Assembly: GCA_002269645.1 (NCBI GenBank)
Contig: NIVC01000013.1
Location: 186,001 to 250,000, forward strand
Length of the DNA stretch: 64,000 nt
Source of the DNA: Macrostomum lignano
Lineage: Eukaryota
Direction of reading: 5' to 3'
The notes beneath the pieces are model-generated. The model saw only the letters and a program-made list of their open reading frames with translations. It did no database searches and was not told the DNA's origin. A program made the position numbers and the translations under genes. Positions 13,375-45,195 of the stretch are shown here, piece after piece; within the stretch, counting starts at the first letter, position 1; each line of letters starts with the position of its first letter.

Positions 13375-14405
13375 TGTGGCGGCCCAATCAGCATGCAGCC
13401 AGCGATTGCGAGTACATCTGCACTGAAACCCCCTGCCCGCCAGACAGACAGTCAGTATGCTAAGTCGGGGGGGGGGGGTTGGCCTTCAATCGTTCCACCT
13501 TTTTGGCGCACCTCCCCATGTGATCGCGTGCTTATTTATGCTTACCGCGTAAAGCAAATAAACTTTCACTTTTCTCGCTTGCAACTTACTTCGTTTTCGC
13601 AAGCCGCTAAATACTACTACTACCAGGAGGTCAGTGTTGCAAGGTGTGTGTGATAAGTATATATATATTTCTTATATATATCTATATATATCTTGTGTGA
13701 GGGTGTTGAGGGTGAGGGCATGTGGGGGCATTGGCATGTGAAATATTTCACAGAACACAGCTTTTTCAGACTCTTTATACTTTTAAAAAAGGAGGGTGCC
13801 CTCGCCCTCATGCCCTCATTCATTTTGAAAATCACTCAAAATAAGTAAAAATGACTGAAAACAGGTGAAAATGATCTGAAAACACCAATTTTTTGTGATT
13901 TTCAAAAATTTTGAAAATGTGCAATTTTCGTGATTCCAGCTCTAAAACCATGAGAAAAGTTGGATTCACGGGTCAATTCAATACAATTTTACAATAGTAA
14001 ATTATGTATATACAAAATGGCCTTCAAAAAACCATTATTTCTAGGAAATGCTTTAGATATTCAGTCAGCTATAACAAAACTAGCAACCATCTGGAAAATA
14101 CCCAGAACTTCATATACCCTCATAAAATTTCGCAGGTGAGCTCAGTAGGGAGGTAGCAAACAAACCAAACAATACAACACACAGTACCACTCTAAGCCCG
14201 CGCGCAGACTGCCACAATGAATCGAAATTTTAGACTGAGTGGAGTAGGTAGCACAATGCCGTTACTACACCCACACAAACCCTTTTTCAAGCTCACAAGC
14301 TGCAGCACGAATCTAACAATTAAAAGCATTACTATATAACCAGACGCAAAGCTGTTTTACTCGTCTTATCATTTCGCAAGATTAGACTGACACACTATAA
14401 TTTAG

Positions 14406-15220
14406 GATTATACTACAGAATTGATAACGCTATTGAAATTGCCAAATTATTTAGTGAAGTATCAAAACGAGACCAAAGATCTTTAACGATAGAACTTACT
14501 AAACTATCTGATGAGGAGCGCCGAGCTCTTTTGAAATCTTCTGAGAAACTAGATCGAGCCTTTAGTGAAAAGACGAAGAAAGCTAAGAAGAAAGAGAAAG
14601 AAATCGACAAGAATGAGGAAGTTCGCCGATTCCTTCAACGGCTACAAGCGAAAATAGAGGAGAATCTTCGCAATGTTGTTGTTGTTAAAACACGGTTCGA
14701 TGGACTTGAGGATCTTCGGCCGATTGATGACAGCGAGGATTTGGAAGATTCCGAGATTCAGACCCGGTTTAAGGATTTAGATATCAACAAATGTCTAGCC
14801 AACTTTGCCCAAGGACGTCTGATCATCTATCTACAACAAAAGAGAGGTCTGACTCTAGCCGCCATCGCTATCAAACTCAAGATAGCCATCAAGTACACCG
14901 AACGTCTAGCCAACTTTGCAAAGTTTGCATCGCGATATCGTGGTCTACTCTGCTCATCATACTCCATGGATACCATCATGAAATTCAAGTCGGCTATTGA
15001 GCGCCGTTGTGATGAGAACGCCAACTTTGCAAGCCTGCTTGAAGAAGATCCACTTCCAACATTTAGTGGAGGCTCTGGTGTGCAAGATGACGCTTCAACT
15101 TCACCAAGACGATCACATGTTGCAAGTGCTTCAGGACGATCTGACGTGACGGAAATGGAAGAGGATGATGATGAGCTTCTCAGCAATGACTTGCCGCTGT
15201 TTCGAAATTTTCGTTTTTGA
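14406..15220 (+). CDS. Orphan protein exon: Lys/Glu coiled-coil, possible HTH-like helical domain, acidic tail
   Basis: Frame open from the acceptor ctgacacactataatttag| at 14405 to the stop at 15220; helical segment LTLAAIAIKLKIAIKYTERLANFAKFASRYRGL. Confidence 0.6.
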
Positions 15221-15696
15221 ATAGAAGACTTTCCTGTATTGTCAGGAATTCCTGTAATGTCAGGAATTGTCAGGAATTCCTGTATTGTCAGGAATTAGCG
15301 CGAGCTTAAAAATATAAACCATCTCTTTGCGATTGTGCTCAAGCTGAGTCAGCCTTCTTTTGTGTCTGAGACTCTTTTGTTGTTCCAGTCTTACTCATTT
15401 TCTACCCCATAAAATAGAAGCTAAAAATGAATATAACAAAAATACAATGACAGACTTGGGTATAGATATGAAAATTATTCCGCACAAGAAGAAGGCTTTA
15501 CATCTTTGCTAGGCTCAGTAGGCAATTTATTTTTTTCAGAAAGATTTAAATTTATCTTTTACTAAATTGCCTACTCTGCCAAAGAACCACTCTGAGTCCT
15601 AATATAAGCAAAGAGGTCATGCAAGTTTCAAACAATTTAAAAAATAGTTTGTGAAATAAAAAATGAAAACTAGATGGCAAAAATTTTCCTAGAAAA

Positions 15697-16945
15697 ATGA
15701 AAGCTAATAACCCAAATGTTCAAAATACACTGCCACAAAAATATTATGATTCTATTATAAATCTCTCTCAAATAAAAACACCCACTTGAAAGGCTCGACT
15801 AATTCAAGAAATTGATAAAGCTTACGATGAATATAAAGCAGAAATATTAAAACACACCGATTGTAAATGCCCCCATATTTGTATTCATTTAGAGTATATC
15901 TTGCACATGTTGATAAATGGGCATTGATTTCGAGACAGCAAATAAGGAATGATGAATTTTTCGTCATGCTGAAATTGAACATTTTCAAACTCCCCATAAC
16001 CCTTGAGAAGTACATTGAAACCGATAAATTACACTATTAAATTATTTCGTAATAAAATAGAAATCAAAAATCAAAACGATTCAAGTGTCTCTCCTGTGAT
16101 CGTACAGGATCCGTTTCAAAACCATGATGCACCACCGCCAAGATTGACAAATTTAAAACAAACAAAATCGCACGATAAACTAATTAATCTCTATGGAGAA
16201 CGCAATTTTATATTCGTAAGCTGCAGTATAGCATGGAATAGTAGAACAAAGAAAAAATACCGTCAAGAATGCCAACCACAGAAGATAGGAATTCAACCAA
16301 TCCACCACTTCGACCAGAGGTAGATAACATGATTTGGATAGATAAGAATAACTCAAATATAACCGTAATCGATATTGATAATGCTGACCTATGCCCTGAG
16401 TTTAATGAACTGTGTATGACTCATTGTTATTGGATTGTTCAGACAAACAAGGGTCATCACTTTTACTTTAACAAGGTAGATAGATTAAAAGTAACGATTC
16501 AACAAAGTGTGGGTTTTCATATTCTGGCTTTAGTATTTGCTCCACCAGGTTTCTATTATGTCGATGGTGATATTAAGGAATACAAACATTTAAAGTGCGA
16601 TGCAATTATACACATACCAGATGTAATTCTTGAGGATATAAATAGATTAATTAAGCCACAGGATAAAAAAACCAAGAACCCGATAAACAGGTACTAAAAA
16701 GTACCGGTCCATCACCCTCAAATCCATCAAATCCATCAAAATGCGATTGTCACACTACAATTCTAATGCAATATTACAACGTAGCAAAATGTACTCACAT
16801 TCAATATGATTGTAGCCATAATGTCATATGTCGTGTCTTGACGTGTTCATGTTTAACCAGAAAATTGCATGAGCCATCCTTCAAGCCCTATAGCAAGTTT
16901 ATCTGCAAATTTAAAGAAGCAGATAGCAACTGCGTACGAAGATAA
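15697..16945 (+). pseudogene. Virus-type AEP primase-polymerase (Prim-Pol) gene, frameshifted; any downstream helicase part is absent
   Basis: Restoring single As in A runs at ~16255 and ~16667 gives NFIFVSCSIAWNSRTKKKIPSRMP...NITVIDID...VQTNKGHHFYF...LVFAPPG, then a Cys/His-rich segment; intronless and AT-rich. Confidence 0.7.
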
Positions 16946-16949
16946 ACCC

Positions 16950-19614
16950 CTCACTCCACCCTGTCAAGACGCCCGGAGACCACCGGTTGACTTCGAACAT
17001 GGCCGACTGCTGGAGCACCCCGGTTCTGCAGCCCGACCCGGTGATGACACCAGCCTGGAGCCGGACTTGGACACCACACGTGAGGCCACTGCGAGAGCAG
17101 CCCGCACGAAGAAGGTCCACACTCGCAACAAGGAGGCCGAAACTGCCCTGGCCGAAGACCTGGAGGCCACTGCGCAAGCAGCCCTTCAGCACGACGACCA
17201 TCGCTGCAGTCAACGCCTGGAGACCGGTTTGGACAACAACCCGGAGGCCACTGATACCTCAGCCCTCCGCAGCGACGCCCACGCCGACTGCCGTTACTTG
17301 GAGATTCGCCCGGACAAAACCTCGGAGGCCACTGCTGACGTAGACCTCCTTGATGATGTCCAAGACTGCGGGTCCCGGAACCTGGAGACGCCCATGGACC
17401 ACGACTCAGAGGCCACTAAACAAGCAGCCCTCCTGATGACAGCCCACAACGCGAATCCAGACCAGCAACGTAAGTCCAACTCCCCGGAGTTTTACGCTGA
17501 GAGTTCTCGCCGTGTTGACAGAGGACACTCTCGCGACGGCTGCAAAGTCAACGCTCTGTCCCCCGAGCCGACAGACAGCTGCTCATCGCCTGTGCGGAAA
17601 GTCGAGTCCCCCTTTGCGACACCGCCCAGTGCTGGAGAAGACTCACCCAATGACGACGATGATCGAGCCGACGGCTACGGCTGTCTGCGACGAGGCGTGC
17701 TTCACGTGTTGCGTCTCGCCCTACAGCCAAGAGTCGCCTGGGCTGTGCAGTGGAGGCAAGTGCACTGCTCCAGCTGCGGAAGTTCCTGTCAAGAGAGCAA
17801 TGATGAGAACTTCGAAACGAGATCAGCGATCGTACGCCGACGTCGTGAGACAAAGTCCCTCGGAGCGACCTAATCCCGACGCCGACAAGACGGAGTCGCG
17901 TGATCGACTGCGAGCCAAAGAAGCGGAGACTGCGGGAGTCATGAACCCGCAGCCATGCCGCGCAGTGCTCACTGATTTTCTGAAGTTGCCGATGACGCGG
18001 CAACAGTTTGTCGACGCGCAGCGCGCCGACCGAGCTATCAGCTACGTGTTCAACTTGGTCAAGAACATAGCCCTGAAGCCTGAGTTCGACGCCCGGTTGC
18101 GGCTGACGAAGGAGCAGCGGAATCTGCTCGGATATTACGATAATCTGCGAGAGGACAACGGCCTGCTGATGATCGATCTGACTGATGGCCAGTAGCCCCC
18201 GAAGGTTGTCCTGCCCGAAGCTCTAGATGCCCAGGTGCTCCAGGAGCTCCACAGTTCGCCACTGTGTGGACACCTCGGCCAGACGAAGACGTTGAAGCGG
18301 CTACGTGAACGATTCTGGAGGCCCGGATTAGCCCGTGTCACCGAGAACTTTATCAGTAAGTGCCGTGCCTGTCTTGAAAGCAAATCGCGAAGGCGAGATC
18401 GAGTGCCTGTACAGAGCTTCCCGGGGAAGAGTACATTGCGATGTAGTCGGCCCTATTGCCCAGAAGAGCAAGAGCGGGAACCGCTACATTTTGACGCTCT
18501 GCGACGCGACGTCGAAGTACCCGTTCGCCTATCCGATGAGGAACCAGAAAGCCAAGACGGTCATCAAGATCCTGCAGGAGCGCTTGATCCCTGAGTTTGG
18601 TGTACCATGCTGGATACACACTGATCAAGAAACCAATTTCACTGGCTCAGCCTTCAAGAAGTTCTGCGACCTGTTTGGAATCCGGCATACAACGACAACA
18701 CCGTACAATCCAGCTTCAAATGGGCAAGTCGAGAACCTCAACAAACAGCTAAAGAGTGTCCTCACCTGCCTCCTCGAGCGCAACCATAACGACTGGGACA
18801 CCTTTCTCCCAGCCTGTCTGATGGCTCTCCGCTCTAGTGTCCACCCGGTGACAGGTTTCACGCCTCACTACCTGGTGTTTGGTCGAGACTTCCGACTTCC
18901 AATCGACAACGCGATCAAGAAGCTGCCGGAGTATGCCGATCTGCCTGACTATGTCAAGGACTTCCAGCGCCGCTTAGACGAAGCGACCGAACCGGCCGTA
19001 CGCTCTCCATTGGGTGGCCGTCCGCGTTGCCCGGTTTCTGGGCGGCGGCGAAGAGGACCTGCCAGCGATCCTGGCGGCCCCGCGTATGAGCTACTTTGAT
19101 TAACTGACGAGCCTGCGCAAATGTTCGCCCTTGATGAGGAAGAAGTTGTACCCCCCTTTCGCGCACTCCCCCGGAGCCTCGCATGTGAATCCCGAGTCAT
19201 GACTTCCTGCTCCCTCTTGCCGCGCTAATCAAGTGCCCTTGGTGCAGAGGTCCCTGAGCCGTCTGGCTTGTTTATTCAGGTTAGCGCCCTGCTAGGCGCC
19301 GTTACGGTCCGAATACCCGCAATTTTGTGGGACTCGAAGCCTTGTTTAGGCGCCACTTCTATGGTGGGCCGGTGCACCCACGCAACACTTAGGCGCCATT
19401 TTTTTCGTGGGCTGGCGCCCCCATGTAATGATTAGGCGTACGCTATTAGCGGGCGGGTGCCCCCGCCGTATCCGGCCGCAATCTTTACGACCTGGCCAGT
19501 CGCGCAATTTCTGGAGCGCATTTGAATTTTGTCTTTACCAGTAAATGCATGTTTATTTTGTTTTAAATAAAGCGCGCGCCGCTTCACTCCGCCTCTTTAT
19601 TTGAACGGGGAGAG
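16950..19614 (+). mobile_element. Ty3/Gypsy internal remnant: repetitive linker plus integrase, disrupted
   Basis: H2C2 domain LHSSPLCGHLG...CRAC; integrase core CDVVGP...HTDQETNF...SNGQVENLN; stop at 18195 and a frameshift near 18420; no gag, PR or RT present. Confidence 0.85.
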
Positions 19615-20669
19615 TGTAGTGAGTCGCTAGTTTAGTTAGGCGCCGCACTAGTCAGCTGTTGCCCTCGCCCTCGCCCCGGGCTTCTGTCTGCCGCTGGGCA
19701 GTTGCCTGTCCCCCCCCCGCCTGTCCTCTGGCCTGTCCTCTGCCCGTTTGCCTGTCTGTCTGTTTGTCCTCGTTTGACCCTTTTGTCTCGTTTTCCCTTT
19801 TTGCAGTGCCAAGACAGCTTGGTCTGGCCTGCCTCTGTTTCGTTCTCTGTTTGGCATCTCCAAATTTGGAGTGCCATTCCGTTTTCCGGTCCCACGGTCA
19901 CGAGTGCCTTCACTTGTGGGCCTTTTCCCCTTGTCATGTGAGTCAGTCACATGGCAAGGCCTTCTTCCTTCTTTAGTCCAAAGTGCAATGATTTCATCAT
20001 TGTACGCTGGGCTCGTGTTTATGGGGAGATCACGTGCGCATAGACCCCCCTTGCCTCCTCTGAGGCAGGGCCCGCTTGTTTGTTGCTAAAAATAGCAACA
20101 GAGTCACTTATGAATCTCAGCGGGGGCCTTTCGTAATATGGTGCAATCGATCCTCCCTATAAATGCAGCCCCTCTCATGGCTTGGCTCAGACAACCCTTC
20201 CGTTTCAGTCTTTCCTTTCTGTGCCCGCGTTTCTCAGTATTCACTTCTCCTTTCCGCCGTTTCGCTCAGCGCGTGTGCTAAAGTTTAAACTCCAAGACTC
20301 CCGATTTTGCGCGTGACTGCCTCTGATTGTTCCTGCTATCAATTAGCAGGCCAGCTCGGATCGCCCGAAGCTAGCACTTTCGCTCTCACCCCGCACCAGC
20401 CCGGCAGGGACTGCTGACGGTGGGCACCTCTGCGCGAGAACTGCTAAATCTGCACGAAGTGCGAGTCTCTTTCTCTCGTCTTAGTTATTTGCTTCTACGA
20501 GCTCAGCACCTCACCGAAGGCTGCGACTCTGCGAAGCTGGTGGCAGCACTACCTACGCTACGAGAACTACTTTCTAAGAAACCGCCAACTGGAGGTCATC
20601 GACCGGGAGCCAGAAGATCTGCCAGGCCACCTCTAAACGCTATCGAGGAAAGTAGATAACAACACTTCA
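19615..20669 (+). mobile_element. LTR of about 1055 bp
   Basis: TGTAGTG...CACTTCA termini (6/7 inverted match); preceded by the purine tract AACGGGGAGAG and followed by the PBS-like TGGTGGCAGCG. Confidence 0.75.
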
Positions 20670-20670
20670 T

Positions 20671-20682
20671 TGGTGGCAGCGC
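20671..20682 (+). promoter_or_regulatory. Primer-binding site, tRNA-Leu type
   Basis: TGGTGGCAGCG one base after the LTR-terminal CA; complementary to the 3' end of tRNA-Leu. Confidence 0.65.
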
Positions 20683-20944
20683 TCCTATAGAAGGCCTCTA
20701 TACAACAGGCAGACAAATATACTTCACGCTTATTAAGAATCTTTGCTTCATCTCGTTTACAAATTCAAATGTCGTGTACCTCATTCCATATACATCTGGA
20801 TACTATCTCACTGGATCTCTATTATCTGCATTGCTGTACATATGTGTGTAAATAAACATGTAATTTTACAGTAAATCTTGCACATACAAATAAGTCGTGT
20901 ATACTTTCCAATTTCTCCAGCAAACCAGTCAGCCAGTTACGGGA

Positions 20945-21065
20945 CGACATGGTCGACTGGCGGAGGTGGCATGGCAGGGACGACTCTCGGAGGTGGCATG
21001 GCACGGACGACTCGCGGAGGTGGCATGGCACGGACGACTCGCGGAGGTGGCACAACGAGGACGAC
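20945..21065. repeat. 27-bp tandem repeat x4
   Basis: GGAGGTGGC recurs at 20962, 20989, 21016 and 21043. Confidence 0.8.
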
Positions 21066-21319
21066 TGACTGGCGCGCAGTGCAGGGCTTGACAGGGACGA
21101 TTGGCAGAGCTGGCATGACAGGGACAAAATGTGGACTAATTTTCGTGCTTTGTATTTACTTATACCGTACTGTCTTTGCTTGATGATACTCTAAAACATT
21201 TTTTACTTTACTCTTCTTTTCAATCATGGCTTTTCACACGTGTGCGACTTTTTACCGTACGGTTTTTCCCGCCATAAAAAACCGCATTGTAATGTACAAT
21301 ACATAACAACGCGGTTTTC

Positions 21320-21735
21320 AATGCGGGATTCGATGCGGGATTTCCCGACATTAATTTAATTTGATTTATTAAGCCCCATCGATGCGGTAATTGATGCGGG
21401 ATTTCCCGACATTAATTTAATTTGATTTATTGAGCCCCATCGATGCGGTAATTGATGCGGGATTTCCCGACATTAATTTAATTTGATTTATTAAGCCCCA
21501 TCGATGCGGTAATTGATGCGAGATTCGATGCGGGATTTTGACATTAATTTAATTTGATTTATTAAGCCCCATCGATGCGGTAATTGATGCGGGATTCGAT
21601 GCGGGATTTCCCGACATTAATTTAATTTGATTTATTAAGCCCCATTGATGCGGTAATTGATGCGGGATTCGATGCGGGATTTCCCGACATTAATTTAATT
21701 TGATTTATTAAGCCCCATTGATGCGGTAATTGATC
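21320..21735 (+). repeat. Tandem array of ~49-59 bp units, left arm of an inverted pair
   Basis: Unit gatgcggtaattgatgcgggattcgatgcgggatttcccgacattaatttaatttgatttattaagccccatc. Confidence 0.9.
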
Positions 21736-22229
21736 TCAATCAATGCATGGTTTACAAGGCATGCAAATATCAGAAGGTGTAGTTGTATAATACAGGCGCG
21801 CATGTATAATCAGATTATTAAAGCAGGCAAACGCCCAGGTGCAATTTCAACAGACGCATAAATAATGGCGCACCGACTAAAGAGTAAATATTGGTATGGC
21901 TAACCCGCAGGTGCATAAATATCATAGCGCAAAATATTAAACAAAAGCGGTTCGGGGAAATCCCAAAAGGGAGGTTTTAGCCGCCCGTTTTCGCCGCCCT
22001 AACCCTCTTATGGGTACAATTAGGTTGAAAGTATTTCAAGTCATTAGGTTGTAAGACCCTCCATATTTCAGGTGGGTGGACTCGAGCCCGGGGCCAGCCC
22101 ATTACAGTTTTTTGGGCCGGCCCCTCTGCCAATTTCCTCCCTAGGAGCGAGCTATCAGAATTGGTCTTTTAACCCCCGTGCATACACACATAGAGACCCC
22201 TCAGTTAGACCCCTCAGAGACCCCAAACT

Positions 22230-22900
22230 CTTCCCCAGGCCCCGCTGCAGCGCGTGCGGGGGGTTACACAGCTCAGCCAATTGCATTTCGGGACGCAATC
22301 TGGCGCTGGATTTTACGAGCTGTGTCTCGCACAATGACTGTGCCTGTGGGATGCGAGAGTTTGTATCTGTCGGGCCGCACTCTATCGATGCCTTTTACTG
22401 CTGGCTGACTAGTGTGTTCAAGCAGGGGGCAATTGCTATTGCGCACAATGGCTCTGCGTATGACGCATTCCTCCTGCTCGGCGCCCTACTCAACGGACTG
22501 GCCAAGAAGAAGCCGCAGGTGATCTTCCAGAACAGCCGCCTAATGTACATGAAGTGCGACAAGATCACGTTCAAGGACAGCCTCAACTTTATCCCTATTG
22601 GTCTGGCGCCATTCCCAAAGGCGCTTGGTTTGGGCACCCAACTGACCAAAGGAGATTTCCCGCACGTGTTCAATCAGCCACAAACTGGGGTTACGTAGGC
22701 CCCTACTGCTCAATTGATATGTACGGCGGGAAGAAGAATAAGCAGCACGACTCCATCGCCGACTGGCTGACCAAGCAGGAGGGTCAAGTGTTTAATTTTA
22801 ATAAGGAGTACCTGGACTATTGCCTGCAGGACACGCTAATTTTGCGGGAAGGCTGTCTAAAGTATGCCCGCATGATTAAGGACATTTGTGCTGGCAAATG
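22230..22900 (+). pseudogene. Polinton/Maverick (adintovirus-type) protein-primed DNA polymerase B fragment, exonuclease region
   Basis: CSACGGLH, AHNGSAYD (ExoII), FKDSLNF, KGDFPH and YCLQDTLIL (ExoIII); 1-nt frameshift at ~22684; polymerase palm absent. Confidence 0.85.
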
Positions 22901-23280
22901 TGCTGGAACAGCACAAATGATCGCGAAAGCCAGAAGGAAAAATACAACAAAATTAATTTCAGTAACTGTATTAAATTTTAATCACTTTAGGCCCTTTCCG
23001 TAAAAAGAAGAGAAGCTGAAGGTCAGAAACGTTAAAGGCAAAACGCAATTTAATTTTTAATAACATTATAAGTTATAATACACAAGGACAACTTAATGTA
23101 ACTTCAGTTGTCCTTGATAATACATCGCTCGTAATAAGTACCTGGCTTTACTCCACTCTACAGTCTGCTTTACTAGTCTTTTTATTTTCAATTATTTGAA
23201 ATTTTTTTCAATTTTTTCAATTATTTTTCAATTCATTAATATTAAATTATTGTGCAGTGCAGTGCAGTGCCAGTGGACTT

Positions 23281-23451
23281 TAGTGGTGTAGCCAGGGAGG
23301 CCGCCTTAACAATCGTTGGGCGGCAACTTCACCCCACCTGCAAGACACCCCACCAGGGGGGGGGTGGGGTTGGGCGTGGCGGGTGCATGAGGCATGGCCA
23401 GCCAGGCCAACCCCCCCCCCCAATTAAAATTCCTGGCTACGTCGATCACTG
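23281..23451. mobile_element. hAT-type MITE of about 170 bp
   Basis: Termini tagtggtgtagccagg ... cctggctacgtcgatcactg; flanks agtggactt / agtggattt resemble a TSD with one mismatch. Confidence 0.6.
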
Positions 23452-23699
23452 AGTGGATTTGTGGAGACTACAGATGAATTTCTTTCTTTGGTTGTTTGTT
23501 TCTAAGAACTAAACAAAATATTTTTATTAACTTAAAAACGAAAAGCAAAAATATTTTACCGAAAATAACAAAGTAAAAACATGTTTCAAGTATTTCTTTA
23601 TTAATTACAGCGTAATACTGTATGATATTATTCACTTAGTTTTGAATTTAAGAATGAAAAATGCTAAAAATGTGACAACTGGCGTAATAGCTAAGCATA

Positions 23700-23880
23700 T
23701 CAGTTTTAAATTTAAATATTGCGATTGTTGCAAAGTAACTGTAACGGACTTCCGAAATTTGAGTAACTTACCGTTACTCCGTTACCAAAATAGGAAAGTA
23801 ACTTGCGTAAGGAACGCTTTACGAAAAAGTAACTTGCGTTACCATTTACAAGTTACTCGGTAACGGAAGTGCCCAACACT
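23700..23880. mobile_element. hAT-like non-autonomous element end with GTAAC subterminal repeats
   Basis: Repeated gtaac/gttac motifs ending in gtaacggaagtgcccaacactg. Confidence 0.45.
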
Positions 23881-24649
23881 GCTTTTTACCACAGATCTTA
23901 TGGAAATTTTTCATATTCAATAACTTTCGCATTCATTGATGGTTTGCATCCATTGATGCCAGTCCTTTCCTTAGATCACTTAGACAATTCATTTAGATAT
24001 TTGTTCCTGATGGGTAGCTGCCTTGTGAAATGATCATAAATGCAAATAAAATTACCCATCACGAATGCCACTAAATGAATGCGCAAGTTAATAATATCCT
24101 ATATTATGGAGTGTGCTAAAAACGAATCCTTTGTGCTCTATAGCCAATCTGGCTTGTTTTAAGTTGCATTTTTCTTTTTCTTTTTTTATTTGATAGACGG
24201 TTGCTTGGCTTTTTAAAGTAACCTTTGCTGTTGCTAAAATTTTGACAATAAACTTCGTTCCTTTTATACAAAAAGTAAAAAATCTCTGAGTTTACCGGCT
24301 TAAGTATTTAAAATTAGATAAGATACAAGATAAGTAGAATATCAACCAGTCAACGTAGCAAAGAAGCTCAAAACATTTACTTCAAAACATTTACTTTGTT
24401 TTGTTTTGTTAAGATAATTGAAAAATTTACGGCCCGGCCTGGGCTGGACCAGGCCGGGCCACAAAATAGCAACACCCAGTTCAATCAACATGCAGCAGCA
24501 GGCTGGGCGAACAAGCTAGACAGACCCACGATTGTCAGGTCCATGTCTCCGTTGCCTCGCTGAAGCTGCAGTTGCTGCAGATTCACCAAGGTCACCACGT
24601 TGTTGCCAAGCTGATTGAACAGCTCGCCATTATTTGCTACCACCTATTG

Positions 24650-25060
24650 GGCTTAATAATTGAAATTAATTAAATGTCGGGATATCCCGCATCGAATCCC
24701 GCATCAATTACCGCATCGATTGGGCTTAATAAATCAAATTAAATTAATGTCGGGAAATCCCGCATCGAATCCTGCATTAATTACCGCATCGATAGGGCTT
24801 AATAAATCAAATTAAATTAATGTCGGGAAATACCGCATCGAATCCCGCATCAATTACTGCATCGATTGGGCTTAATAAATTAAATTAAATTAATGTCAGG
24901 AAATCCCACATCGAATCCCGCATCAATTACTGCATTGATGGGGCTTAATAAATCAAATTAAATTAATGTCGGGAAATCCCGCATCGAATCCCGTATCAAT
25001 TACTGCATCAATGGGGCTTAATAAATCAAATTAAATTAATGTCAGGAAATCCTGCATCAA
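24650..25060 (-). repeat. Tandem array, reverse complement of 21320-21735 (right arm)
   Basis: Unit taaattaatgtcgggaaatcccgcatcgaatcccgcatcaattaccgcatcgattgggcttaataaatcaaat. Confidence 0.9.
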
Positions 25061-28000
25061 ATCCGGTGCACACGGCGTACAAGGAAAAATTGGAAAAGCT
25101 CTGGCGGCGCACATGGCGCATAGCGCACAAGAAATTGGATAAACTCTAGCGGCGCACATGGCACATGGCACTGAAAAAATATATAGTTACTCTTCGTTAT
25201 AGTTATATTCGTTACTATACTATCAAAGAGTACTAAAATTATGTAAATCACAATATAAATTACGTAAATGAAATTCAAATTTGTCAACCGTAAATTCAAA
25301 TTTGTTTACCAATGAATTATTAATTAACCGGTAAAAAATAAATAATTAATTGATTAATTAGAACTTTATTTGACATTGACATTAACATTGTATTAATTGA
25401 TCATTGACATCAATTCATCAAATACTGAAATACATTGTCATCAATAGGAGATGGAGTCAAACCCTGAGTCTGAGTTGGAGTCAGAGTCAGACCCTCAGTC
25501 AGTCCAGGTTCAGGCTGAGCCTGCTAATTATAGTGCTATCCAACCTGCTAATTCTACTTCTACTGGATCAACAAATACAAAAGGTAAGAGCTATGCTATC
25601 TAGAGCAGTTTCTCTTCTTAAGTTTATTCACTTATTATCCATTGTTTGTGTGTCAGTAAAACTTATAAACTTATAAACTAATAAAAACTTGATGAAAATA
25701 AAATAAGATAATTCAATTCAATAGCTAGTTGATAATGATAGGTTAGATTGGCATAGTTAACTTATAGCCAATAAGCAAGACATTAGACATATACTAGACC
25801 TAGCACATAAGCACATAGCATTAGCACCTAGTCTAGTCCTAGCATTAATATAGGCATTATAGTACGCTTGTAGACCCTATAATAGGCCTAATATGATATT
25901 ATATTGGTATATTCAGATTGATTCAATTGAGTGATTGCTAATTATTACTACCTATAGGCCTACTATATATATAGTAGAATCTAAATGGATATTGGATATA
26001 TATATAGATTCTTATATATACTAATACCTATAGGTATATAGGCAGGCCTACTATACCTGTAAGCCTACTATATATAATCCAATATATATAGTAGATCCAG
26101 TATATATTGGATTAAATTAATTAAATTAAATTAAAATAAAATAAATTTATTAAGTGAAATTAGTTTGTTTTTTTAATTTATTAATTTGTTAATAAATTTT
26201 AATTGATAGATATATATATATTCATTTTTCCTTTTTTGTCAGCTATTCAGGATTGGTCATTTCTGACTAAATCAAAAGGCATTGGAAAGAGTCATGGCTG
26301 TAAACGTCCAGCAACATCATCAAGTGCATCTGAGCAACCTCCATCAAAGCAACAGTGCCATTCCATTGATGAACACTATTGTTTATCTTGTCTTGAAGAA
26401 GGCAAAGCCATTGCGAATTGCAAGATTTACCGAGGAAATCTTTCTTCCCAACAGCGACATGCCAAAAATCACCATGCTCAGAGCAAAAAGCCTACTAAGT
26501 TTGCTCGACCTGACAATCCTATTGTTCAGCAGCTTCTGAGGACTAGGCAGGCAGAAGCAGATGTATTGACAGAGCCATTAGCCACTGCTGCTGTTGCTTC
26601 TACTGTTGGCGCTACTAGTGCTATGGCTACTGCTACTGATATTTCTGGTGCTACCACCATTCTTCTATCAAGTGGGACTAGAGAAGATACTGAAGGTAGC
26701 CCTGGTATCAGCAGTGTTTCATTGGCAACTACCTCAGCCAGGACTACATTGCTCTGTCAAGTAAGTTATACTGTATGAAGTGTATTCTATAGGATATTAG
26801 AGTTTTATACTCAATATGTTATTCAATTCATAGAACCTTATTTGGCAATAGCAGTATGCATACACTTTATGGGGGAAAATTCAGGAGTTAATAAAAGCTA
26901 TATATTACTATCATACATTATAAGTTTATATTTTTGATGTTGAAGCACAGTTTTTATGTAAAGTTTATGTATTCCCAATTCCCATACAGCCACTAGGTGC
27001 ATCAGCATCATCTACTGGTCTGCTGGCTACTAGTTGTACATCAGCTTCTCCCTTGGTCATTCAGTTGTCAGATGCAGAAGTGTCATGTAAGTCATTAACT
27101 ATAGTGGCACCATAATGCATGGAGCCAGAAGTATTATCAGACTTCTTAAAGTTGCCTTTTATATAACATGCAGGTGCAGCTGCCATGCAGTCTACACCCG
27201 CCATCTCAGCACGACCTGTGATTCCACCTGCCTGTTGTCAAGCTGTTGCACCTCTGGCTGCCATTACTCAACAGCTAACAAGCCATTCAGATCAGCTCTG
27301 TACTATCGTAAAAGCTTTACAAGGTCTGAAGCTAGCTTCATCCGGCCATGCCCCTACAGAGCAAACGAAGTCACAGCTACCAACTGATTGTCTTCACGAT
27401 GCTATGTCTAAGGCCAGATCTGTGCCTGAGCTCCTAGAATCGCCACTCTTGGCTATAGCACCGTGTGGTGAAGATCACATAGTCTATTGTGTCCCATGTT
27501 TCGAGCGCACAAAAAAGATTCGTCTCTTGCCTTCGAGTTATTCTGTGGCCGATATCTTTCGTCATCTGTGAACTTCAATTGTACTATTATATTTATTAGC
27601 ATATGGTATGCTTTAACCTAACCTAAATAAGTTTTTTATGTAACAAGACGTCTTGTATTCCCACATATTTCAAGACAGCCAACAGCAACTGTTACTGAAG
27701 AGTCCACAATGGCCAAGAGCAAATTCAGCAGGAAAGGGTCACTTGCCACTGGCCTATTGGTAACTGCCTAAACAATGCAGAAATACTACGACAACCATGC
27801 GGAGTTCTGCAAATTTCGCTATACTGTTACCACTGGTCATCTTTCTGGAGCATCTGGTGTAGAGCACCGGAAGGCTATTGCTGAAAAGCAAGTGGACCAG
27901 AAGCGCCAGTGTCATAACGAGAAGGTTGTAAAAAATCTGCCTCGATCTGCTGCCTTTGTCATCGAGGCGGCCGCCGCTGGTGTCCATTACGAGAATTTAA

Positions 28001-39056: not shown

Positions 39057-39797
39057 ATGCAAATGTTGCTTAATCGTCGTTCATATCCGGTGTTGATAAC
39101 TCTAGTTGCATTCTCTCTATTCACGATACAGTGCAGTGCAGGTAAGTGGCAGTTTAAACTGTTTAAGTGTTTTTTACAATTACTAGTAGAATAATTTGAG
39201 AGTGAATTTTCGCGAATTTTTTTGACGAAAGAGAATACGGCGTTTGAAGGTGCTGGAAGTGTGACAGGGGTGCTGGAAGGGTGACAGGGGTGCTGGAAGG
39301 GTGACAGGGGTGCTGGAAGGGTGACAGGGGTGCTGGAAGGGTGACAGGGGTGCTGGAAGGGTGACAGGGGTGCTGGAAGGGTGACAGGGGTGCTGGAAGG
39401 GTGACAGGGGTGCTGGAAGGGTGACAGGGATGGAAGACATAACAATAAAGGACCTGAACGCAACTCATACACAGCGCCACTGACGAGGAGGTCTCCGGTG
39501 GAGCCGATAAGCGCGGAAGATGCGAACTGGGAATATTTTGGAAGGACTTCAACTGAAGTCTACGGAATACAATCGACCGAAAATCCTAAGCAGTTCATTC
39601 TGTACTTTAATTCAAGCTACCTCCGGCTGGCGGAGAATAATTCGGCCGCAAATACAGGCGGAGTCCTCCTTCTGGGCCCGTTCGACTCGGAGCATGGCAG
39701 AAGCTTTGCTTTGGCCATGGAGTTCTACGGTGAAGAGGTACAGTAGTGATTTGAATGCAAAAACCACAAGCGGTGAAAATTACCATGCTGACACAGG

Positions 39798-39875
<78 letters not shown>

Positions 39876-41588
39876 GTGAGAAACAGCTGATGAAGAGACT
39901 GTACATGTAACCCCATCGCACGCTGTACGCACGCTCAGGTGCAGTGCATTTCCAACGGCTCCTACTGCTTCTTGAACAAGACGCTGCCAGAACAGCAGTT
40001 TAATGAAGGCTGCAGAGAAATTGACGATGTCAAGTTTTTTGCTCTGGTGAGTGATTTTTTCAGCAATGAAAACTTAACCATTAACATGAAGCAGTATCAT
40101 CACTAAAGCTACTGTAAGTAATAAATTGAACTATCCTATATCTTAACAACGATTTCAATTTCAGATATACCGCAAATTCCACCCAGCGTCCGGTCGACGG
40201 TGCCGAAAGAACGAAGAAATCTGTCTGATAGGGGCAACTTCACTTAAATGCCGCGTGATCAGTGAGTCACACTTAATTCGTATCACAATTCACTGATTTA
40301 CAGTAAAAATGGTAACAGTAATTTGTTAACAGTTCTTTGTTAACAGTAAAAATGTCAATTAAACGGTCTGGTCTTTTTCGCTCTAATTAACTGTTGATTG
40401 CCTGCGCTCCTATTTACCCTCTCCCACTCACATTCACCCTCATGCCCCTCACATTTACCCTCTTCCCTTCCCATTAACCTTCTTTTCCCTCCAATTGATT
40501 CTCCTCCCCCTGTTTACCTTCTTTCCCCCCCATATTTACCCTCTTCCCCTCCCATTTACCCTCTTCCCCTTCCATTTACTTTCTTCCCCTCCCATTTGCC
40601 CTCTTTTCACTCCCATTCACCCTCCCCCCCCTATTTGCCCTCTTTTCACTCCCATTCACCCTCTTGCCCCTCACACTTACCCTCTTGCCCCTCACATTTA
40701 CCCTCTTCCCCTCCCATTTACCCTCTCCCCCCTATTTGCCCTCCCATTCACCCTCTTCTCCATTTACCCTCTTGCCCCTCACATTTACCCTCTTCCCTTC
40801 CCATTAACCTTCTTTTCCCTCCAATTTATTCTCCTCCCCCTGTTTACCTTCTTCCCCCCCATATTTACCCTCTTCCCCTCCCATTTACCCTCTTCCTCTT
40901 CCTTTTATCCTTTTCCCTCTTCCCTTAATATTCACACTCCTCCCCTCCCATTTTACTCCAATTTGGATTCTCACTCCCATTTCATCTCATTCTCATCCTC
41001 CCATTTACCCTCTTCCCCGCTCATACACAATCGAACGCCTTGTCCGGAAAAGCCAATCAAAACTCGCCCTCAAACTGGCACAAATGCCGCGCAGTGCAAA
41101 ACCCGAAGTGCCAGTCGCAGCGGAGGACCTGCCAGCTGCCAGACTTGCTCAGCTCGATTCTGCAGCCAAGAAGCGACGACAACGAAGTCGTCACCACGAA
41201 TACAAACTGGCCACCGGAGCCGCTGTCAACCGTTAAAGCTCCGACTCCAGAAATAAAACTGGACAAACAAAACAGCATTGAAGTAGCAGCTGGGGCCATC
41301 ACTCCTCTGGTTCTACTTCTAGTAGCAATCTCTGCAATAATGGGCATTAAAGCTTTGTACTACTACTACCGTAGAAAACCTTTTAATCCCATCACGATTC
41401 TTGTGCCAATCGGGGATCAGGATTTCCGGATTGAAGACGAATTAGCAGATCCGCTGCTGCCAAAGCGCGAAGATCTCGCCCAGCTTATAGCCAGGGTGCA
41501 GCAGTCGCAGCGGTTCAGCTTGAATCAAGTCAGCCGGTCAGTTCATCAGCCGCAGGCCATTCTTTCAAACAATAAAATTGTTTGCTAA
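39057..41588 (+). CDS. Orphan type I single-pass membrane protein; exons 39057-39141, 39475-39737, 39939-40046, 40165-40261, 41053-41588
   Basis: Kozak-like CCGCCATG; signal peptide PVLITLVAFSLFTIQCSA; GT-AG introns in consistent phase; Cys-containing ectodomain with N-x-S/T sites; TM AAGAITPLVLLLVAISAIMGIKALYYYY followed by RRK. The last acceptor is weak and an alternative exists. Confidence 0.75.
39247..39428. repeat. 20-bp minisatellite (GTGACAGGGGTGCTGGAAGG) x9, intronic
   Basis: Near-perfect period of 20. Confidence 0.95.
39797..39875. repeat. (AGAC)n microsatellite, intronic
   Basis: About 19 units. Confidence 0.95.
40400..41020. repeat. Pyrimidine-rich degenerate repeat (cccatttaccctcttcccct), intronic
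   Basis: Almost AG-free C/T tract upstream of the last exon. Confidence 0.85.
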
Positions 41589-41899
41589 CTTTGCACTATT
41601 CTGCTCAATATAATTCAAGCCAATAGTAGCCAGTTTAGCAAATTGTTTTCTTTTTCTGGTTGTACTTATGAGGAGCATTAAAAACGCAAAATATTTACAT
41701 ATTTATATTTGCCATTAATTTTGCTCTCTGATAAACAAATAAAATATTTACCGGATATAAACAAACGGCTATACAATTAACGTAGCAATGCTGAGAAATT
41801 ATTTAAACGGTTGAAAATGCAGTAAAGATTTGGCTTAATAAAATTCTAGCTAATAGTGCAGAGATTTTAGACAGCAGACAGGAGCCACACCTCTGAAGT

Positions 41900-42665
41900 G
41901 TCATGGTTCAGGGAGGGTGTAGAGAACACACACCTGAAGGAGCAATGGCTCAGGGAGGGTGTAGAAGACACACAACTGAATGAGTAATGGCTCAGGGAGG
42001 GTGTAGAAGACACACAACTGAATGAGCAATGGCTCAGGGAGGGTGTAGAAGACACACAACTGAATGAGCAATGGCTCAGGGAGGGTGTAGAAGACACACA
42101 CCTGAATGAGCAATGGCTCAGGGAGGGTGTAGAAGAGACACAACTGAATGAGCAATGGCTCAGGGAGGGTGTAGAAGACACACACCTGAAGGAGCAATGG
42201 CTCAGGGAGGGTGTAGAAGACACAACTGAATAAGCAATGGTTCAGGGAGGGTGTAGAAGACACACAACTGAATGAGCAATGGCTCAGGGAGGGTGTAGAA
42301 GACACAACTGAATGAGCAATGGCTCATGGAGGGTGTAGAAGACACACAACTGAATGAGCAATGGCTCAGGGAGGGTGTAGAAGACACACACCTGAAGGAG
42401 CAATGGCTCATGGAGGGTGTAGAAGACACACAACTGAATGAGCAATGGCTCAGGGAGGGTGTAGAAGACACACACCTGAAGGAGCAATGGCTCAGGGAGG
42501 GTGTAGAAGACACAACTGAATGAGCAATGGCTCAGGGAGGGTGTAGAAGACACACACCTGAAGGAGCAATGGCTCAGGGAGGGTGTAGAAGACACAACTG
42601 AATGAGCAATGGCTCAGGGAGGGTGTAGAAGACACACACCTGAATGAGCAATGGCTCAGGGAGGG
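41900..42665. repeat. 42-bp (some 40-bp) minisatellite, ~18 copies; probable intron 42682-41893 on the minus strand
   Basis: Unit gggagggtgtagaagacacacaactgaatgagcaatggctca; minus-strand CAG|GTCAG donor and CTTCAG| acceptor bound it. Confidence 0.9.
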
Positions 42666-42686
42666 CGGTCAGATGGGCTGACCTGA

Positions 42687-43121
42687 TCACAAAATCGAGC
42701 AACTCTCTTCAACTTCTGAATTCCACATATCTTCCAATAGTTCGCCGCCAAAGTCATTCAACACGGCCAATTTTACAACGTCAACTACAGCACTGTCGGG
42801 ATTGGCTGGGTCGGACAGAGAGTTGAAATCTCTAGGCAAAGAGGCCACAACTTGTACATAGTCGCCAGTCTGCAATGCTCGCTTATAGTGCAGCACATTG
42901 GGCAGCAGGGGCACTCTCAGCCTGCCAGTGCCATCGTCCAGTACGAACAGATCGTCAGCCAGCATAGCTGACACCCGGCCCTGCAGCCAGGCCATGCTGA
43001 ACTGCAACTCTCGGCCTTCGTGTCTGACGCACCAAGTCGATTCAGAGGCTCCATTGGATAGAGTGCAACCAGACAGCAGATGGGAAATCCACAGTTTACG
43101 GACTGGCAGCATTAGCGGCAT
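42687..43121 (-). CDS. RMI2: RecQ-mediated genome instability protein 2 (OB fold)
   Basis: PVRKL, AWLQGRV, LDDGTG, GDYVQVV and VKLAVL...EDMWNSEVEE match the pattern I recall for RMI2 (PLKV, VWMQGRV, LRDPSG, GKYVMV, VKMTDL, ESMWELEVED); ~144 aa from the first ATG at 43121. Confidence 0.85.
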   Translation of the reverse strand: MPLMLPVRKLWISHLLSGCTLSNGASESTWCVRHEGRELQFSMAWLQGRVSAMLADDLFVLDDGTGRLRVPLLPNVLHYKRALQTGDYVQVVASLPRDFNSLSDPANPDSAVVDVVKLAVLNDFGGELLEDMWNSEVEESCSIL

Positions 43122-43234
43122 GATGCGGATTGTTTTGGTTGAAGACGCCAATTATTTAGTATGAGGGAATCTGTAAAGTATAAATTGAAATTATCTTTGA
43201 AAAGGCTGAGTAGCTTAACTAAAACGGCTAGGAT

Positions 43235-44040
43235 TAACTTTTAATAAACCTTAGCGCTTCTAAAAATAAAACGGGTATGTTTTCCTTTTAATAAACCTCG
43301 GCGCTTCTAAAAATAAAACCGATAGGTTTCCCTTTTAATAAACCTCGGCGCTGCTAAAAAATAAAACGGGTGGGATTTCCTTCTAATAAACCTCGGCGCA
43401 GCTAAAAATAGAACGGATGGGATTCCCTTTTAATAAACCACGGCGAAGCTAAAAATAGAACGGATGGGATTCCCTTTGAGTAAACCTTGACGAAGCTAAA
43501 AATAAAACGGATGGGATTTCCTTTGAGTAAACCTCGACGAAGCTAAAAATAGAACGGATGGGATTCCCTTTGAGTAAACCTCGACGAAGCTAAAAATAGA
43601 ACGGATGGGATTTCCATCTTACAAACTTTGGAGCTAAAAATAGAGCGGATAGGGTTTCCATCTAGGAAAACTTGGCGCTGATAAAAATATAACGGATGGG
43701 ATTCCCTTCTATACTAATAAACCTCGAGGGAGCTAAAATTAAAACGGATAGGACTTCCTTCTATTAAACCTCGGCGCAATAAAAATAGAACGGATGAAAT
43801 TTTCTTCTAATAAACCTCAGTGAAGCCTAAAATAGAACGAATGGGATTCCCTTCTAAAACACCTCGATGCAGCTAAAAATAGAATGGATGGGATTTCATT
43901 AAAAAAACCGTGATGGAGCTAAAAGTTGAACGGATAGGATTTCCCTTCTTTTACACACCACAGAGCTAAAATAGAAAAAGTTGAACTGAGCGAAGTTCCC
44001 ACTAAAAACTCACGCCAGGCTAAAATAGAGAGGATGTAAA
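43235..44040. repeat. Degenerate ~42-43 bp tandem array
   Basis: Unit taataaacctcggcgc(a/t)gctaaaaatagaacggatgggattccctt, ~18 copies, increasingly diverged to the right. Confidence 0.85.
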
Positions 44041-44584
44041 TTTTAACTCGATTAACATTCTGCGAAGCCAGATTACTGATTTAAATTCCCCTCCATTACA
44101 CTGCATTCCGTAAAGCAAAAAATAGAATCTAAGGGAAATTCTCCTTTCAAGCATTCAAGACTTTTGAAACAGAAATAAAAATGATTTCTCAAAATATCTT
44201 TACATTAAAAGTCCAAAAAAGTATAAAAGAGTCCAAAAGTCAACTAGACAAAACCAGCCAAATTTTAACTAATTTAAAATATCTTGTTGACCCTAACAGT
44301 ATTAATAAAAAACGTTTTTTTCAACTGAATATAATTTTTGTACATAAGCAAATAGTACAAAGTGAAACTTACATGTACTTTGAAGAAAAGTCACGATTAT
44401 AAATAGAACTTTGCAGTCACTTTTTAAACAGATCTTTGCAGACCTAAAAAATTACAAATATAAAGACAGACACGCACACAAAACTGCTAGCACTTAACTA
44501 TATTGAATGTTTTTTAAACAAAAAATTAAAAAGTAAATAATTGTGAGAATGCCTTAGCAAAAAAAATATTTGGACAGCACTAAA

Positions 44585-45160: not shown

Positions 45161-45195
45161 CCATTTTGACGCTTCATAACAGCCAATTTGACAGC

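What the first reader, a model, noticed from the sequence alone, without database searches (positions are those of the whole stretch)
15697..16945. Virus-type Prim-Pol (AEP primase) gene hidden by homopolymer frameshifts in an animal genome
Seen: ORF-track pieces 16003-16323 and 16269-16697, plus an unlisted frame to 16945, join into one protein if one A is added to each of two A runs (~16255, ~16667). The joined protein reads LINLYGERNFIFVSCSIAWNSRTKKKIPSRMP...NITVIDID...VQTNKGHHFYF...LVFAPPG, then a Pro/Ser linker and a Cys/His-rich segment. A broken AT-rich frame from ATG 15697 may be its N-terminus. Known: DxD, TxxGxH and a downstream PP motif typify Prim-Pol family AEPs, found in D5-like primase-helicases of large DNA viruses, virophages and polinton-like viruses. 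These differ from the eukaryotic PriS and PrimPol genes. Inference: an endogenous viral gene whose helicase half was lost where Gypsy-derived sequence begins (~16950).
Basis: partly seen in the sequence, partly recalled or inferred. Interest (0 to 1): 0.75.

Follow-up and report, generated by a model that had tools for sequence, protein, structure and literature searches.

The report
Dead fragment of viral primase gene
A roughly 560-base stretch is a broken, truncated leftover of the primase domain of a virophage- or giant-virus-type primase-helicase gene, sitting among transposon debris in a eukaryotic genome; it is a real but non-functional viral fossil of a kind already known.

Summary
The + strand at about 16135-16697 encodes the N-terminal archaeo-eukaryotic primase (Prim-Pol) domain of a D5-like primase-helicase.

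- **Sequence evidence:** the largest piece, searched as it stands, finds 33 relatives among 1.84 billion proteins (best E 4e-18). The full-length relatives have the architecture Prim-Pol + PriCT-2 + D5_N + SF3 helicase.
- **Structure evidence:** an AlphaFold model (pLDDT 83) best matches the pRN1 prim-pol domain and giant-virus D5 primases.
- **Likely source:** the nearest relatives with genomic context lie on AT-rich freshwater contigs that carry Sputnik-type virophage capsid genes.

Only part of the proposed protein is supported.
- One frame change is backed by homology.
- The Cys/His-rich third piece and the N-terminus from the ATG at 15697 have no support.

The copy is dead. It has one frameshift and has lost the conserved motif III acidic residue. 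About 80% of the gene is missing: no PriCT-2, D5_N or helicase sequence was found anywhere in the 64 kb. No other viral gene lies next to it.

The downstream GC-rich block carries a Ty3/Gypsy-type integrase remnant but no LTRs or RT. The host could not be identified, so "animal genome" is untested.

Verdict: a new member of a known kind (an endogenous viral gene fragment), of modest interest.

The parts
16135..16697 (+). Broken gene fragment: the N-terminal AEP (Prim-Pol) domain of a D5-like / virophage-type primase-helicase. It has one frameshift and no in-frame stop inside the homology-supported pieces. There is no Met in the first piece. The conserved motif III acidic residue is lost. The gene is truncated at its 3' side: the PriCT-2, D5_N and SF3 helicase parts are missing.
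   Evidence: Exhaustive HMMER search, best E 4.3e-18. The relatives carry Prim-Pol + PriCT_2 + D5_N + DUF5906. Collinear matches of two frames. Motifs in alignment A1. AlphaFold pLDDT 82.9. Foldseek: pRN1 prim-pol prob 0.96, and Bodo saltans virus D5 E 1e-5.
16698..16945 (+). Whether it belongs to the gene is unproven. It would correspond in position to the unconserved linker that precedes PriCT-2 in the relatives.
   Evidence: No similarity to P0002, to Pfam, to NCBIfam or to 36 related loci. An open frame of this length is expected by chance in about 35% of simulated blocks.
15230..16134 (.). AT-rich block (about 32% GC) upstream of the supported fragment, including the ATG at 15697. It may be further decayed viral DNA, but nothing in it is recognisable.
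   Evidence: Composition. Translation. No tblastx match to the related loci. A short palindromic tandem repeat lies at its left edge, 15220-15311.
16950..21200 (+). Neighbour: a GC-rich block (about 56% GC) that starts at the composition jump. It holds a 338-codon open frame with 81-nt repeats, and a Ty3/Gypsy-type integrase remnant at 18196-19096. The integrase's zinc-binding and core domains lie in two frames (one frameshift). No RT, RNase H or protease lies upstream, and there are no LTRs.
   Evidence: Integrase_H2C2 E 1.1e-16 and rve E 4.5e-16. The best relative carries the Tf2-type SH3 domain. No long direct repeats. Composition.

Best explanation
The locus is a non-functional relic of a viral replication gene. 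A piece of DNA from the virophage / polinton-like-virus / giant-virus gene pool, most likely a Sputnik-type virophage lineage or its giant-virus associates, became part of this eukaryotic chromosome.

Only the N-terminal primase-polymerase (AEP) domain of its primase-helicase gene is still recognisable. In the donor virus, this domain would make primers at the replication origin, and the fused SF3 helicase would unwind the DNA.

Here the domain cannot do that:
- The reading frame is broken once.
- The acidic residue of catalytic motif III is lost.
- There is no start codon in the first piece.
- The PriCT-2, D5_N and helicase parts (about 80% of the gene) are gone.

Shown: the identity of the domain, its breaks, and the absence of the rest of the gene from the window. 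Inferred: the donor lineage, integration as the route, and loss of the remainder by rearrangement with neighbouring transposon sequence.
For: - **Sequence homology.** There are 33 relatives at E<=1e-3, best 4.3e-18. Full-length relatives are Prim-Pol + PriCT_2 + D5_N + DUF5906/P4-type helicase. Of the 34 rows of the family alignment, 23 match Pfam Prim-Pol, best 2e-11.
- **Motifs.** Motif I (DxD), motif II (T..G.H) and the invariant Pro are kept. The motif III acidic residue, conserved in at least 90% of relatives, is not kept.
- **Fold.** The model has pLDDT 82.9. The top PDB matches are the pRN1 ORF904 prim-pol domain (prob 0.96). The top viral matches are the Bodo saltans virus D5 helicase-primase (E 1e-5) and the Harvfovirus primase.
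- **Donor context.** The best-matching IMG/VR and metagenome contigs with context (L004/L040, L005-L007, L009, L013, L031) carry Sputnik-type major or minor capsid genes. Other relatives lie on dense 57-60 kb contigs of 23% GC. The window copy groups with P0001-P0004 and P0006, next to L009, in a neighbour-joining tree.
- **Decay and truncation.** Two frames match adjoining parts of the same relatives. No part of 40 relatives beyond the AEP domain matches anywhere in the 64 kb.
- **Foreign composition.** The block is 32-37% GC, against 44.7% for the window and 56% for the next block.
Against: - The direct Pfam match of the window piece is below the curated cut-off (16.5 against 22.8 bits).
- Identity to the nearest relative is only 36-39%, and that nearest clade sits on short contigs with no context. 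The donor lineage is therefore not pinned down.
- The tree rests on about 100 columns and has no support values.
- No second viral gene lies next to the fragment, so integration of a larger viral genome is inferred and not seen.
- The host is unidentified.
- Read support for the junctions and for the frame change could not be examined.
Confidence: 0.78

Rival explanations
1. The fragment comes from a resident Maverick/Polinton-type element of the host itself, a 'group 2' element whose replication module is an AEP-SF3 helicase instead of pPolB. It would not then come from a virophage or a giant virus.
For: A 2026 preprint reports that group 2 Maverick-Polintons of animal genomes often replace pPolB with SF1/SF3 helicases fused to a polymerase or an AEP PrimPol (bioRxiv 10.64898/2026.06.19.733378, read). 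A Polinton-like pPolB remnant lies about 5 kb downstream, so such elements have been active at this site.
Against: The pPolB remnant is enclosed by its own inverted repeats at 21304-25137, and these exclude the primase fragment. The nearest relatives found in a library that also holds assemblies of public sequencing runs are environmental. Where their context is known, they sit beside Sputnik-type capsid genes. No capsid, ATPase or protease gene was detected near the fragment. No Maverick group 2 sequence was available for direct comparison, so this rival is weakened but not excluded.
Confidence: 0.15
2. The gene is intact in the organism, and the frame changes are homopolymer errors of the assembly. 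A working primase would then be hidden here.
For: The homology-backed frame change falls in a stretch that contains an A run. Neither supported piece contains an in-frame stop. An open frame of 150 codons in DNA of 34% GC suggests limited decay.
Against: Without any frame change the product would still stop after the AEP domain. PriCT-2, D5_N and the helicase are not found anywhere in the window. The conserved motif III acidic residue is lost. The first piece has no Met, and the frame upstream of it crosses six stops. The second proposed join has no homology support.
Confidence: 0.03
3. The AT-rich block is not part of this genome. It would be a contaminant from a protist virus in the sample, joined to host sequence by an assembly error.
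For: There is a sharp composition jump at about 16950. Relatives are known only from environmental contigs.
Against: A free viral genome would carry an intact gene, whereas this copy is broken and cut down to one domain. Its GC content (32-37%) is well above that of most free relatives (20-28%). The block is only about 1.7 kb and lies between eukaryotic transposon sequences on both sides.
Confidence: 0.04
4. It is an exon or pseudogene of a cellular AEP, either the eukaryotic primase small subunit or PrimPol.
For: The superfamily is the same.
Against: No Pfam match to the cellular families at E<=1. All relatives have the viral/plasmid architecture Prim-Pol + PriCT-2 + D5_N + SF3 or SF2 helicase. 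The structural matches are pRN1 and viral primases.
Confidence: 0.01

Closest known systems
Primase-helicases of Sputnik-type virophages, represented here by uncultured contigs L004/L040, L005-L007, L009 and L031 that carry Sputnik-type capsid genes
   Same: An N-terminal AEP domain with DxD, T..G.H and the invariant Pro. Identity to the window copy is 32-36% over about 95-130 residues. The DNA is AT-rich.
   Different: These are complete genes of 770-830 aa with PriCT-2, D5_N and an SF3 helicase, lying next to capsid genes. The window copy is a single broken domain with no viral neighbour, inside chromosomal repeat DNA.
D5-family primase-helicases of giant viruses (Nucleocytoviricota), e.g. 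Bodo saltans virus A0A2H4UVF4 and Harvfovirus A0A3G5A2W8
   Same: Best structural matches of the model (Foldseek E 1e-5 and 5e-5, 23-25% identity). The closest full-length relative, P0002, has the same domain order.
   Different: The helicase half is absent from the window. The nearest sequence relatives are uncultured, so they cannot be assigned to a giant-virus family. NCLDV core genes are rare in animal genomes: 3 of 495 metazoan genomes were positive in PMC5294986.
Prim-Pol domain of ORF904 of the archaeal plasmid pRN1 (PDB 1rni, 9aam), a solved example of a Prim-Pol-type AEP domain
   Same: The same fold (TM 0.46-0.52 on the query, prob 0.96), and the same Pfam family through the relatives.
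   Different: Only 11-12% identity. It comes from an archaeal plasmid. No match is detectable at the sequence level.
AEP-SF3 helicase replication modules of group 2 Maverick-Polinton elements in animal genomes (bioRxiv 10.64898/2026.06.19.733378)
   Same: An AEP primase-polymerase fused to an SF3 helicase, carried by virus-like elements integrated in animal genomes.
   Different: No such sequence was at hand, so no comparison was made. No Maverick capsid, ATPase or protease gene lies beside the fragment.

Membership tests
Pfam Prim-Pol (PF09250), AEP superfamily | Profile match at or above the curated gathering score | tested here: not met
   The window piece scores 16.5 bits (E 0.012) against a cut-off of 22.8, on profile positions 55-112. 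The 150-aa version does not reach E 0.01. By transitivity, 23 of the 34 rows of the family alignment do match, best 2e-11.
Pfam Prim-Pol (PF09250), AEP superfamily | Catalytic motif I (DxD/E) and motif II (a conserved His that binds the nucleotide). These motifs are taken from established knowledge of AEPs. | tested here: met
   Both Asp residues, and the Thr, Gly and His of motif II, occupy the columns that are at least 90% conserved in A1.
Pfam Prim-Pol (PF09250), AEP superfamily | Catalytic motif III acidic residue | tested here: not met
   The column is Asp in at least 90% of the 34 rows. The window copy does not keep it.
Pfam Prim-Pol (PF09250), AEP superfamily | AEP fold | tested here: met
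   AlphaFold model with pLDDT 82.9 and pTM 0.76. Top PDB hits are pRN1 prim-pol (prob 0.96, E 0.07-0.1), with CAPP Prim-Pol further down the list. Fifteen viral primases match at E<=1e-3. The PDB E-values alone are weak.
D5-like / virophage-type primase-helicase (full gene) | PriCT-2 domain after the AEP domain | tested here: not met
   tblastn of 40 relatives against the whole window gives no match outside the AEP domain at E<0.05. No Pfam hit in the downstream frames.
D5-like / virophage-type primase-helicase (full gene) | D5_N domain plus SF3 (P4-type) helicase | tested here: not met
   Absent from all 64 kb. Present in the relatives P0002, P0005, P0006, P0017 and L009.
Endogenous viral element (integrated viral genome) | Viral sequence contiguous with host chromosomal sequence on both sides | tested here: inconclusive
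   Eukaryotic transposon genes flank it in the window: RVT_1, a Ty3/Gypsy integrase, a pPolB remnant, a Gypsy pol and a FLYWCH-MULE transposase. Read support and host identity could not be checked.
Endogenous viral element (integrated viral genome) | Further genes of the same virus nearby (capsid, packaging ATPase, protease) | tested here: not met
   No window frame other than the two primase pieces matches any of the related loci. Virophage MCP and penton queries find nothing. The upstream 298-codon frame has no homologue.
Cellular eukaryotic AEPs (PriS, PrimPol) | Profile match to the cellular primase families | tested here: not met
   No such Pfam family at E<=1.
Ty3/Gypsy LTR retrotransposon (downstream block 16950-21200) | Integrase with an H2C2 zinc-binding domain and an rve core | tested here: met
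   Integrase_H2C2 E 1.1e-16 and rve E 4.5e-16.
Ty3/Gypsy LTR retrotransposon (downstream block 16950-21200) | RT, RNase H and protease upstream of the integrase, and flanking LTRs | tested here: not met
   No Pfam hit in 16857-18192. No long direct repeats in 8000-34000.

The most novel reading that the evidence does not exclude
If the host is an animal, the fragment could be a trace of a Sputnik-type virophage, or of its giant-virus partner, in an animal germline. That would imply that cells of this lineage, or cells in intimate contact with its germline, once supported a giant virus and virophage system. Such systems are so far tied to protists.
Probability: 0.15. Interest if true: 0.6.

Novelty: new member of a known kind. 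Interest (0 to 1): 0.3.

Why it matters
Fragments of large-DNA-virus and virophage genes in eukaryotic genomes record past virus-host contact. D5-type primase-helicase is one of the marker genes used in such surveys (PMC5294986). This copy adds one divergent data point: 36-39% identity to anything on record.

The virus lineage is otherwise known only from short freshwater metagenome contigs. A single decayed domain says little on its own. Its value depends on whether longer copies exist elsewhere in the same genome and on what the host is.

For annotation, the locus should be labelled a pseudogene fragment and not a primase gene.

Tried and rejected
**Searches that returned nothing**
- Word-index homologue search with the 142-aa piece.
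- Sequence search of the PDB with the single piece and with the profile: only noise.
- PHROGs: only noise.
- NCBIfam: nothing for the window pieces.
- tblastn against 50,697 phage records: no match, which argues against a phage or bacterial source.
It was repeated with the 5 closest rows.

**Searches for more of the element in the window**
- The missing helicase half, other viral genes, or a second copy: none.
- Terminal repeats or duplications around the AT-rich block: nothing convincing.
- Similarity between the GC-rich block and the sequence upstream of the AT-rich block, to test for an insertion into a pre-existing element: none.
- Upstream 298-codon frame: no Pfam family and no homologue.

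**Host identification**
- Exact look-up of window ORFs, Rfam and tRNA scans: nothing.

**Readings rejected**
- The Cys/His-rich tail as a zinc-binding part of the protein: no evidence.
- The ATG at 15697 as the start: six stops intervene.
- A cellular PriS or PrimPol origin.

Full report
**1. What is in the sequence**

I kept the pieces separate throughout and searched each as it stands.

**2. Is it more than chance?**

Yes, for two of the three pieces.
- The largest piece (142 aa from its ATG, 150 codons stop to stop) gives only a sub-threshold Pfam match to Prim-Pol: PF09250, E 0.012, 16.5 bits against a cut-off of 22.8. The match does fall on the part of the profile that holds the catalytic motifs.
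- A word-index search found nothing.
- An exhaustive HMMER search of 1.84 billion representative proteins found 33 relatives at E<=1e-3, three of them at E<=1e-10 and the best at 4.3e-18.
- The first piece on its own matches the stretch of P0002 and P0004 that lies immediately before the stretch matched by the largest piece (E 7e-7 and 3e-4, against 1e-26). The same collinear two-frame pattern is seen with P0006, P0024 and P0026. One frame change inside a once-continuous gene is therefore supported by homology.
- The third piece (the Pro/Ser and Cys/His-rich one) has no similarity to P0002, to Pfam, to NCBIfam or to 36 related loci.
- In simulated AT-rich blocks of the same size, about 35% contain at least one open frame of 90 or more codons. 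Its openness therefore proves nothing.
- The frame from the ATG at 15697 is the same phase as the first piece. It crosses six stop codons before reaching it and matches nothing.

**3. What the relatives are**

- The long relatives are primase-helicases. P0002 (966 aa) has PriCT_2, D5_N and a P4-type helicase C-terminal region.
- P0005, P0006 and P0017 have Prim-Pol, PriCT_2, D5_N and DUF5906 in various combinations.
- A second group (P0011, P0013, P0018) joins the same N-terminal domain to an SF2 helicase.
- Of the 34 rows of the domain alignment A1, 23 match Pfam Prim-Pol, best 2e-11.
- In A1 the window copy keeps the two Asp of motif I, the Thr, Gly and His of motif II, and the invariant Pro. 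It does not keep the acidic residue of motif III, which is conserved in at least 90% of the rows.

**4. Structure**

- An AlphaFold2 model of the largest piece, built with A1 as its alignment, is confident: mean pLDDT 82.9, pTM 0.76.
- Against solved structures, the two best matches are the prim-pol domain of pRN1 ORF904 (9aam, 1rni; prob 0.96, TM 0.46-0.52). CRISPR-associated Prim-Pol appears lower down. The E-values are weak, at 0.07-0.1.
- Against predicted viral structures, 15 matches reach E<=1e-3. They are led by the D5 family helicase-primase of Bodo saltans virus (1e-5) and a Harvfovirus primase, followed by many phage Prim-Pol proteins.
- Sequence, motifs and fold agree: this is an AEP of the Prim-Pol type.

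**5. Which viruses**

- Relatives come from environmental assemblies, mostly freshwater, and are AT-rich; most of the related loci have 20-28% GC.
- Where there is context, the best-matching contigs carry virophage capsid genes. L004, and its metagenome counterpart L040, encode a Sputnik-type major capsid protein (E 9e-77). L005-L007 and L042 encode the Sputnik V18/19-type minor capsid protein. L009, L013 and L031 carry one or both.
- The primase-helicase of L009 has all four domains.
- Other relatives (P0034) lie on dense 57-60 kb contigs of 23% GC that look like giant-virus genomes, with ceramidase, glycosyltransferase and DNA glycosylase genes.
- In a neighbour-joining tree of the domain, the window copy groups with P0001-P0004 and P0006, next to L009. 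The tree rests on about 100 columns and has no support values, so it is only indicative.
- That nearest clade is known only from contigs of 0.8-5.5 kb without informative neighbours.
- No phage record matches at the sequence level.

**6. State of the copy**

Counting breaks in the primase-helicase gene:
- One frameshift backed by homology.
- No in-frame stop within the two supported pieces.
- No Met in the first piece.
- Loss of one conserved catalytic residue.
- Loss of everything after the AEP domain.

tblastn of all 40 relatives against the whole window finds no match to PriCT-2, D5_N or either kind of helicase anywhere in the 64 kb. About a fifth of a gene of P0002's length remains.

The supported frame change lies in a stretch containing an A run, so an assembly error there cannot be excluded. 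The other defects do not depend on it.

**7. Surroundings**

- The fragment sits in an AT-rich block at roughly 15230-16945 (32-37% GC). The window as a whole is 44.7% GC, and GC jumps to 58-66% at about 16950.
- Recognisable homology stops about 250 bases before that jump.
- The GC-rich block (16950-21200) has a 338-codon open frame with 81-nt repeats and no known domain. It is followed by a Ty3/Gypsy-type integrase whose H2C2 and rve parts lie in two frames.
- That block has no RT, RNase H, protease or LTRs, so it is itself a fragment. The junction is not a clean retrotransposon insertion.
- Upstream, the 298-codon frame at 14324-15217 has no family and no homologue.
- No window frame other than the two primase pieces matches any related viral locus, and virophage capsid queries find nothing.
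- The fragment has no second copy in the window and no terminal repeats.
- The rest of the window is transposon- and satellite-rich: an RVT_1 fragment, a Polinton-like pPolB remnant within its own inverted repeats, a near-intact Gypsy pol, a FLYWCH-MULE transposase and many minisatellites.
- The host could not be identified. The transposon set is compatible with an animal but does not prove one.

**8. Explanation**

The best reading is a dead relic of the AEP domain of a virophage- or giant-virus-type primase-helicase. It was acquired by integration of viral DNA and then cut down by rearrangement among transposons (confidence about 0.78).

The main rival is descent from a resident group 2 Maverick-Polinton. 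These elements are reported to carry AEP-SF3 helicase modules in animal genomes (bioRxiv 10.64898/2026.06.19.733378). I could not compare such sequences, so this stays at about 0.15.

The remaining rivals are each unlikely, for the reasons listed under the rival explanations:
- An intact gene masked by sequencing errors.
- An assembly chimera.
- A cellular primase.

**9. Comparison with what is known, and novelty**

Giant-virus core genes, including D5 primase-helicase, have been found integrated in many eukaryotic genomes. They were rare in animals: 3 of 495 metazoan genomes were positive in PMC5294986. Virophage and PLV integrations are common in protists (for example PMC10120064 and PMC8547959, listed).

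This locus is a new, divergent and heavily decayed member of that known kind. Interest is modest (0.3). It would rise if the host proves to be an animal and longer virophage-type copies exist elsewhere in its genome.

Noticed in passing
window 21304-25137: A unit bounded by inverted arms (21304-21755 and 24641-25137, 89-96% complementary). The arms are themselves built of 61- and 73-nt tandem repeats. Inside it, open frames at 22048-23000 in two phases give a weak match to protein-primed DNA polymerase B (DNA_pol_B_2, E 3.6e-4). It looks like a shortened Polinton/Maverick-type remnant.
   Followed up: partly
window 52631-55537: A single 968-aa ORF with zinc knuckle, aspartyl protease, RT, RNase H and integrase zinc-binding domains. 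This is a near-intact Ty3/Gypsy pol, much better preserved than the integrase remnant next to the finding.
   Followed up: partly
window 58938-60461: A 507-aa ORF with a FLYWCH zinc finger and a MULE transposase domain.
   Followed up: no
window 16857-17870: A 338-codon open frame that starts in the AT-rich block and runs across the composition jump into GC-rich DNA. It has five 81-nt (27-aa) repeats at 17056-17433 and no known domain.
   Followed up: partly
window 39249-52000: A dense run of minisatellites, including about 144 copies of a 20-nt G-rich unit at 48015-50896. This array accounts for the GC skew of +0.63 there. A C-rich 21-nt array at 40407-40917 accounts for the skew of -0.33.
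   Followed up: partly
window 15220-15311: A short palindromic tandem repeat (unit TTCCTGTAATGTCAGGAA, also seen with period 28) exactly at the left edge of the AT-rich block. It might mark an old transposon end or a junction.
   Followed up: no
window 14324-15217: A 298-codon open frame immediately upstream of the AT-rich block. It has no Pfam family, no homologue in the 5.8-billion-protein index and no match in the related viral loci.
   Followed up: yes
L038 2039-2878 (JACCDR012014100.1): One of the closest contig relatives (39% identity) encodes a 279-aa ORF that ends just where the PriCT-2-like region begins in P0002. This lineage may therefore include other shortened or interrupted copies. 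A small Cys-rich ORF lies just upstream of it.
   Followed up: no
L002 / L003 (57-60 kb contigs, 23% GC): Contigs carrying the relative P0034 encode a ceramidase, a PAP2-type phosphatase, a glycosyltransferase, a dual-specificity phosphatase and a Fapy DNA glycosylase in a dense arrangement. They look like an uncultured giant virus with sphingolipid-related genes.
   Followed up: no
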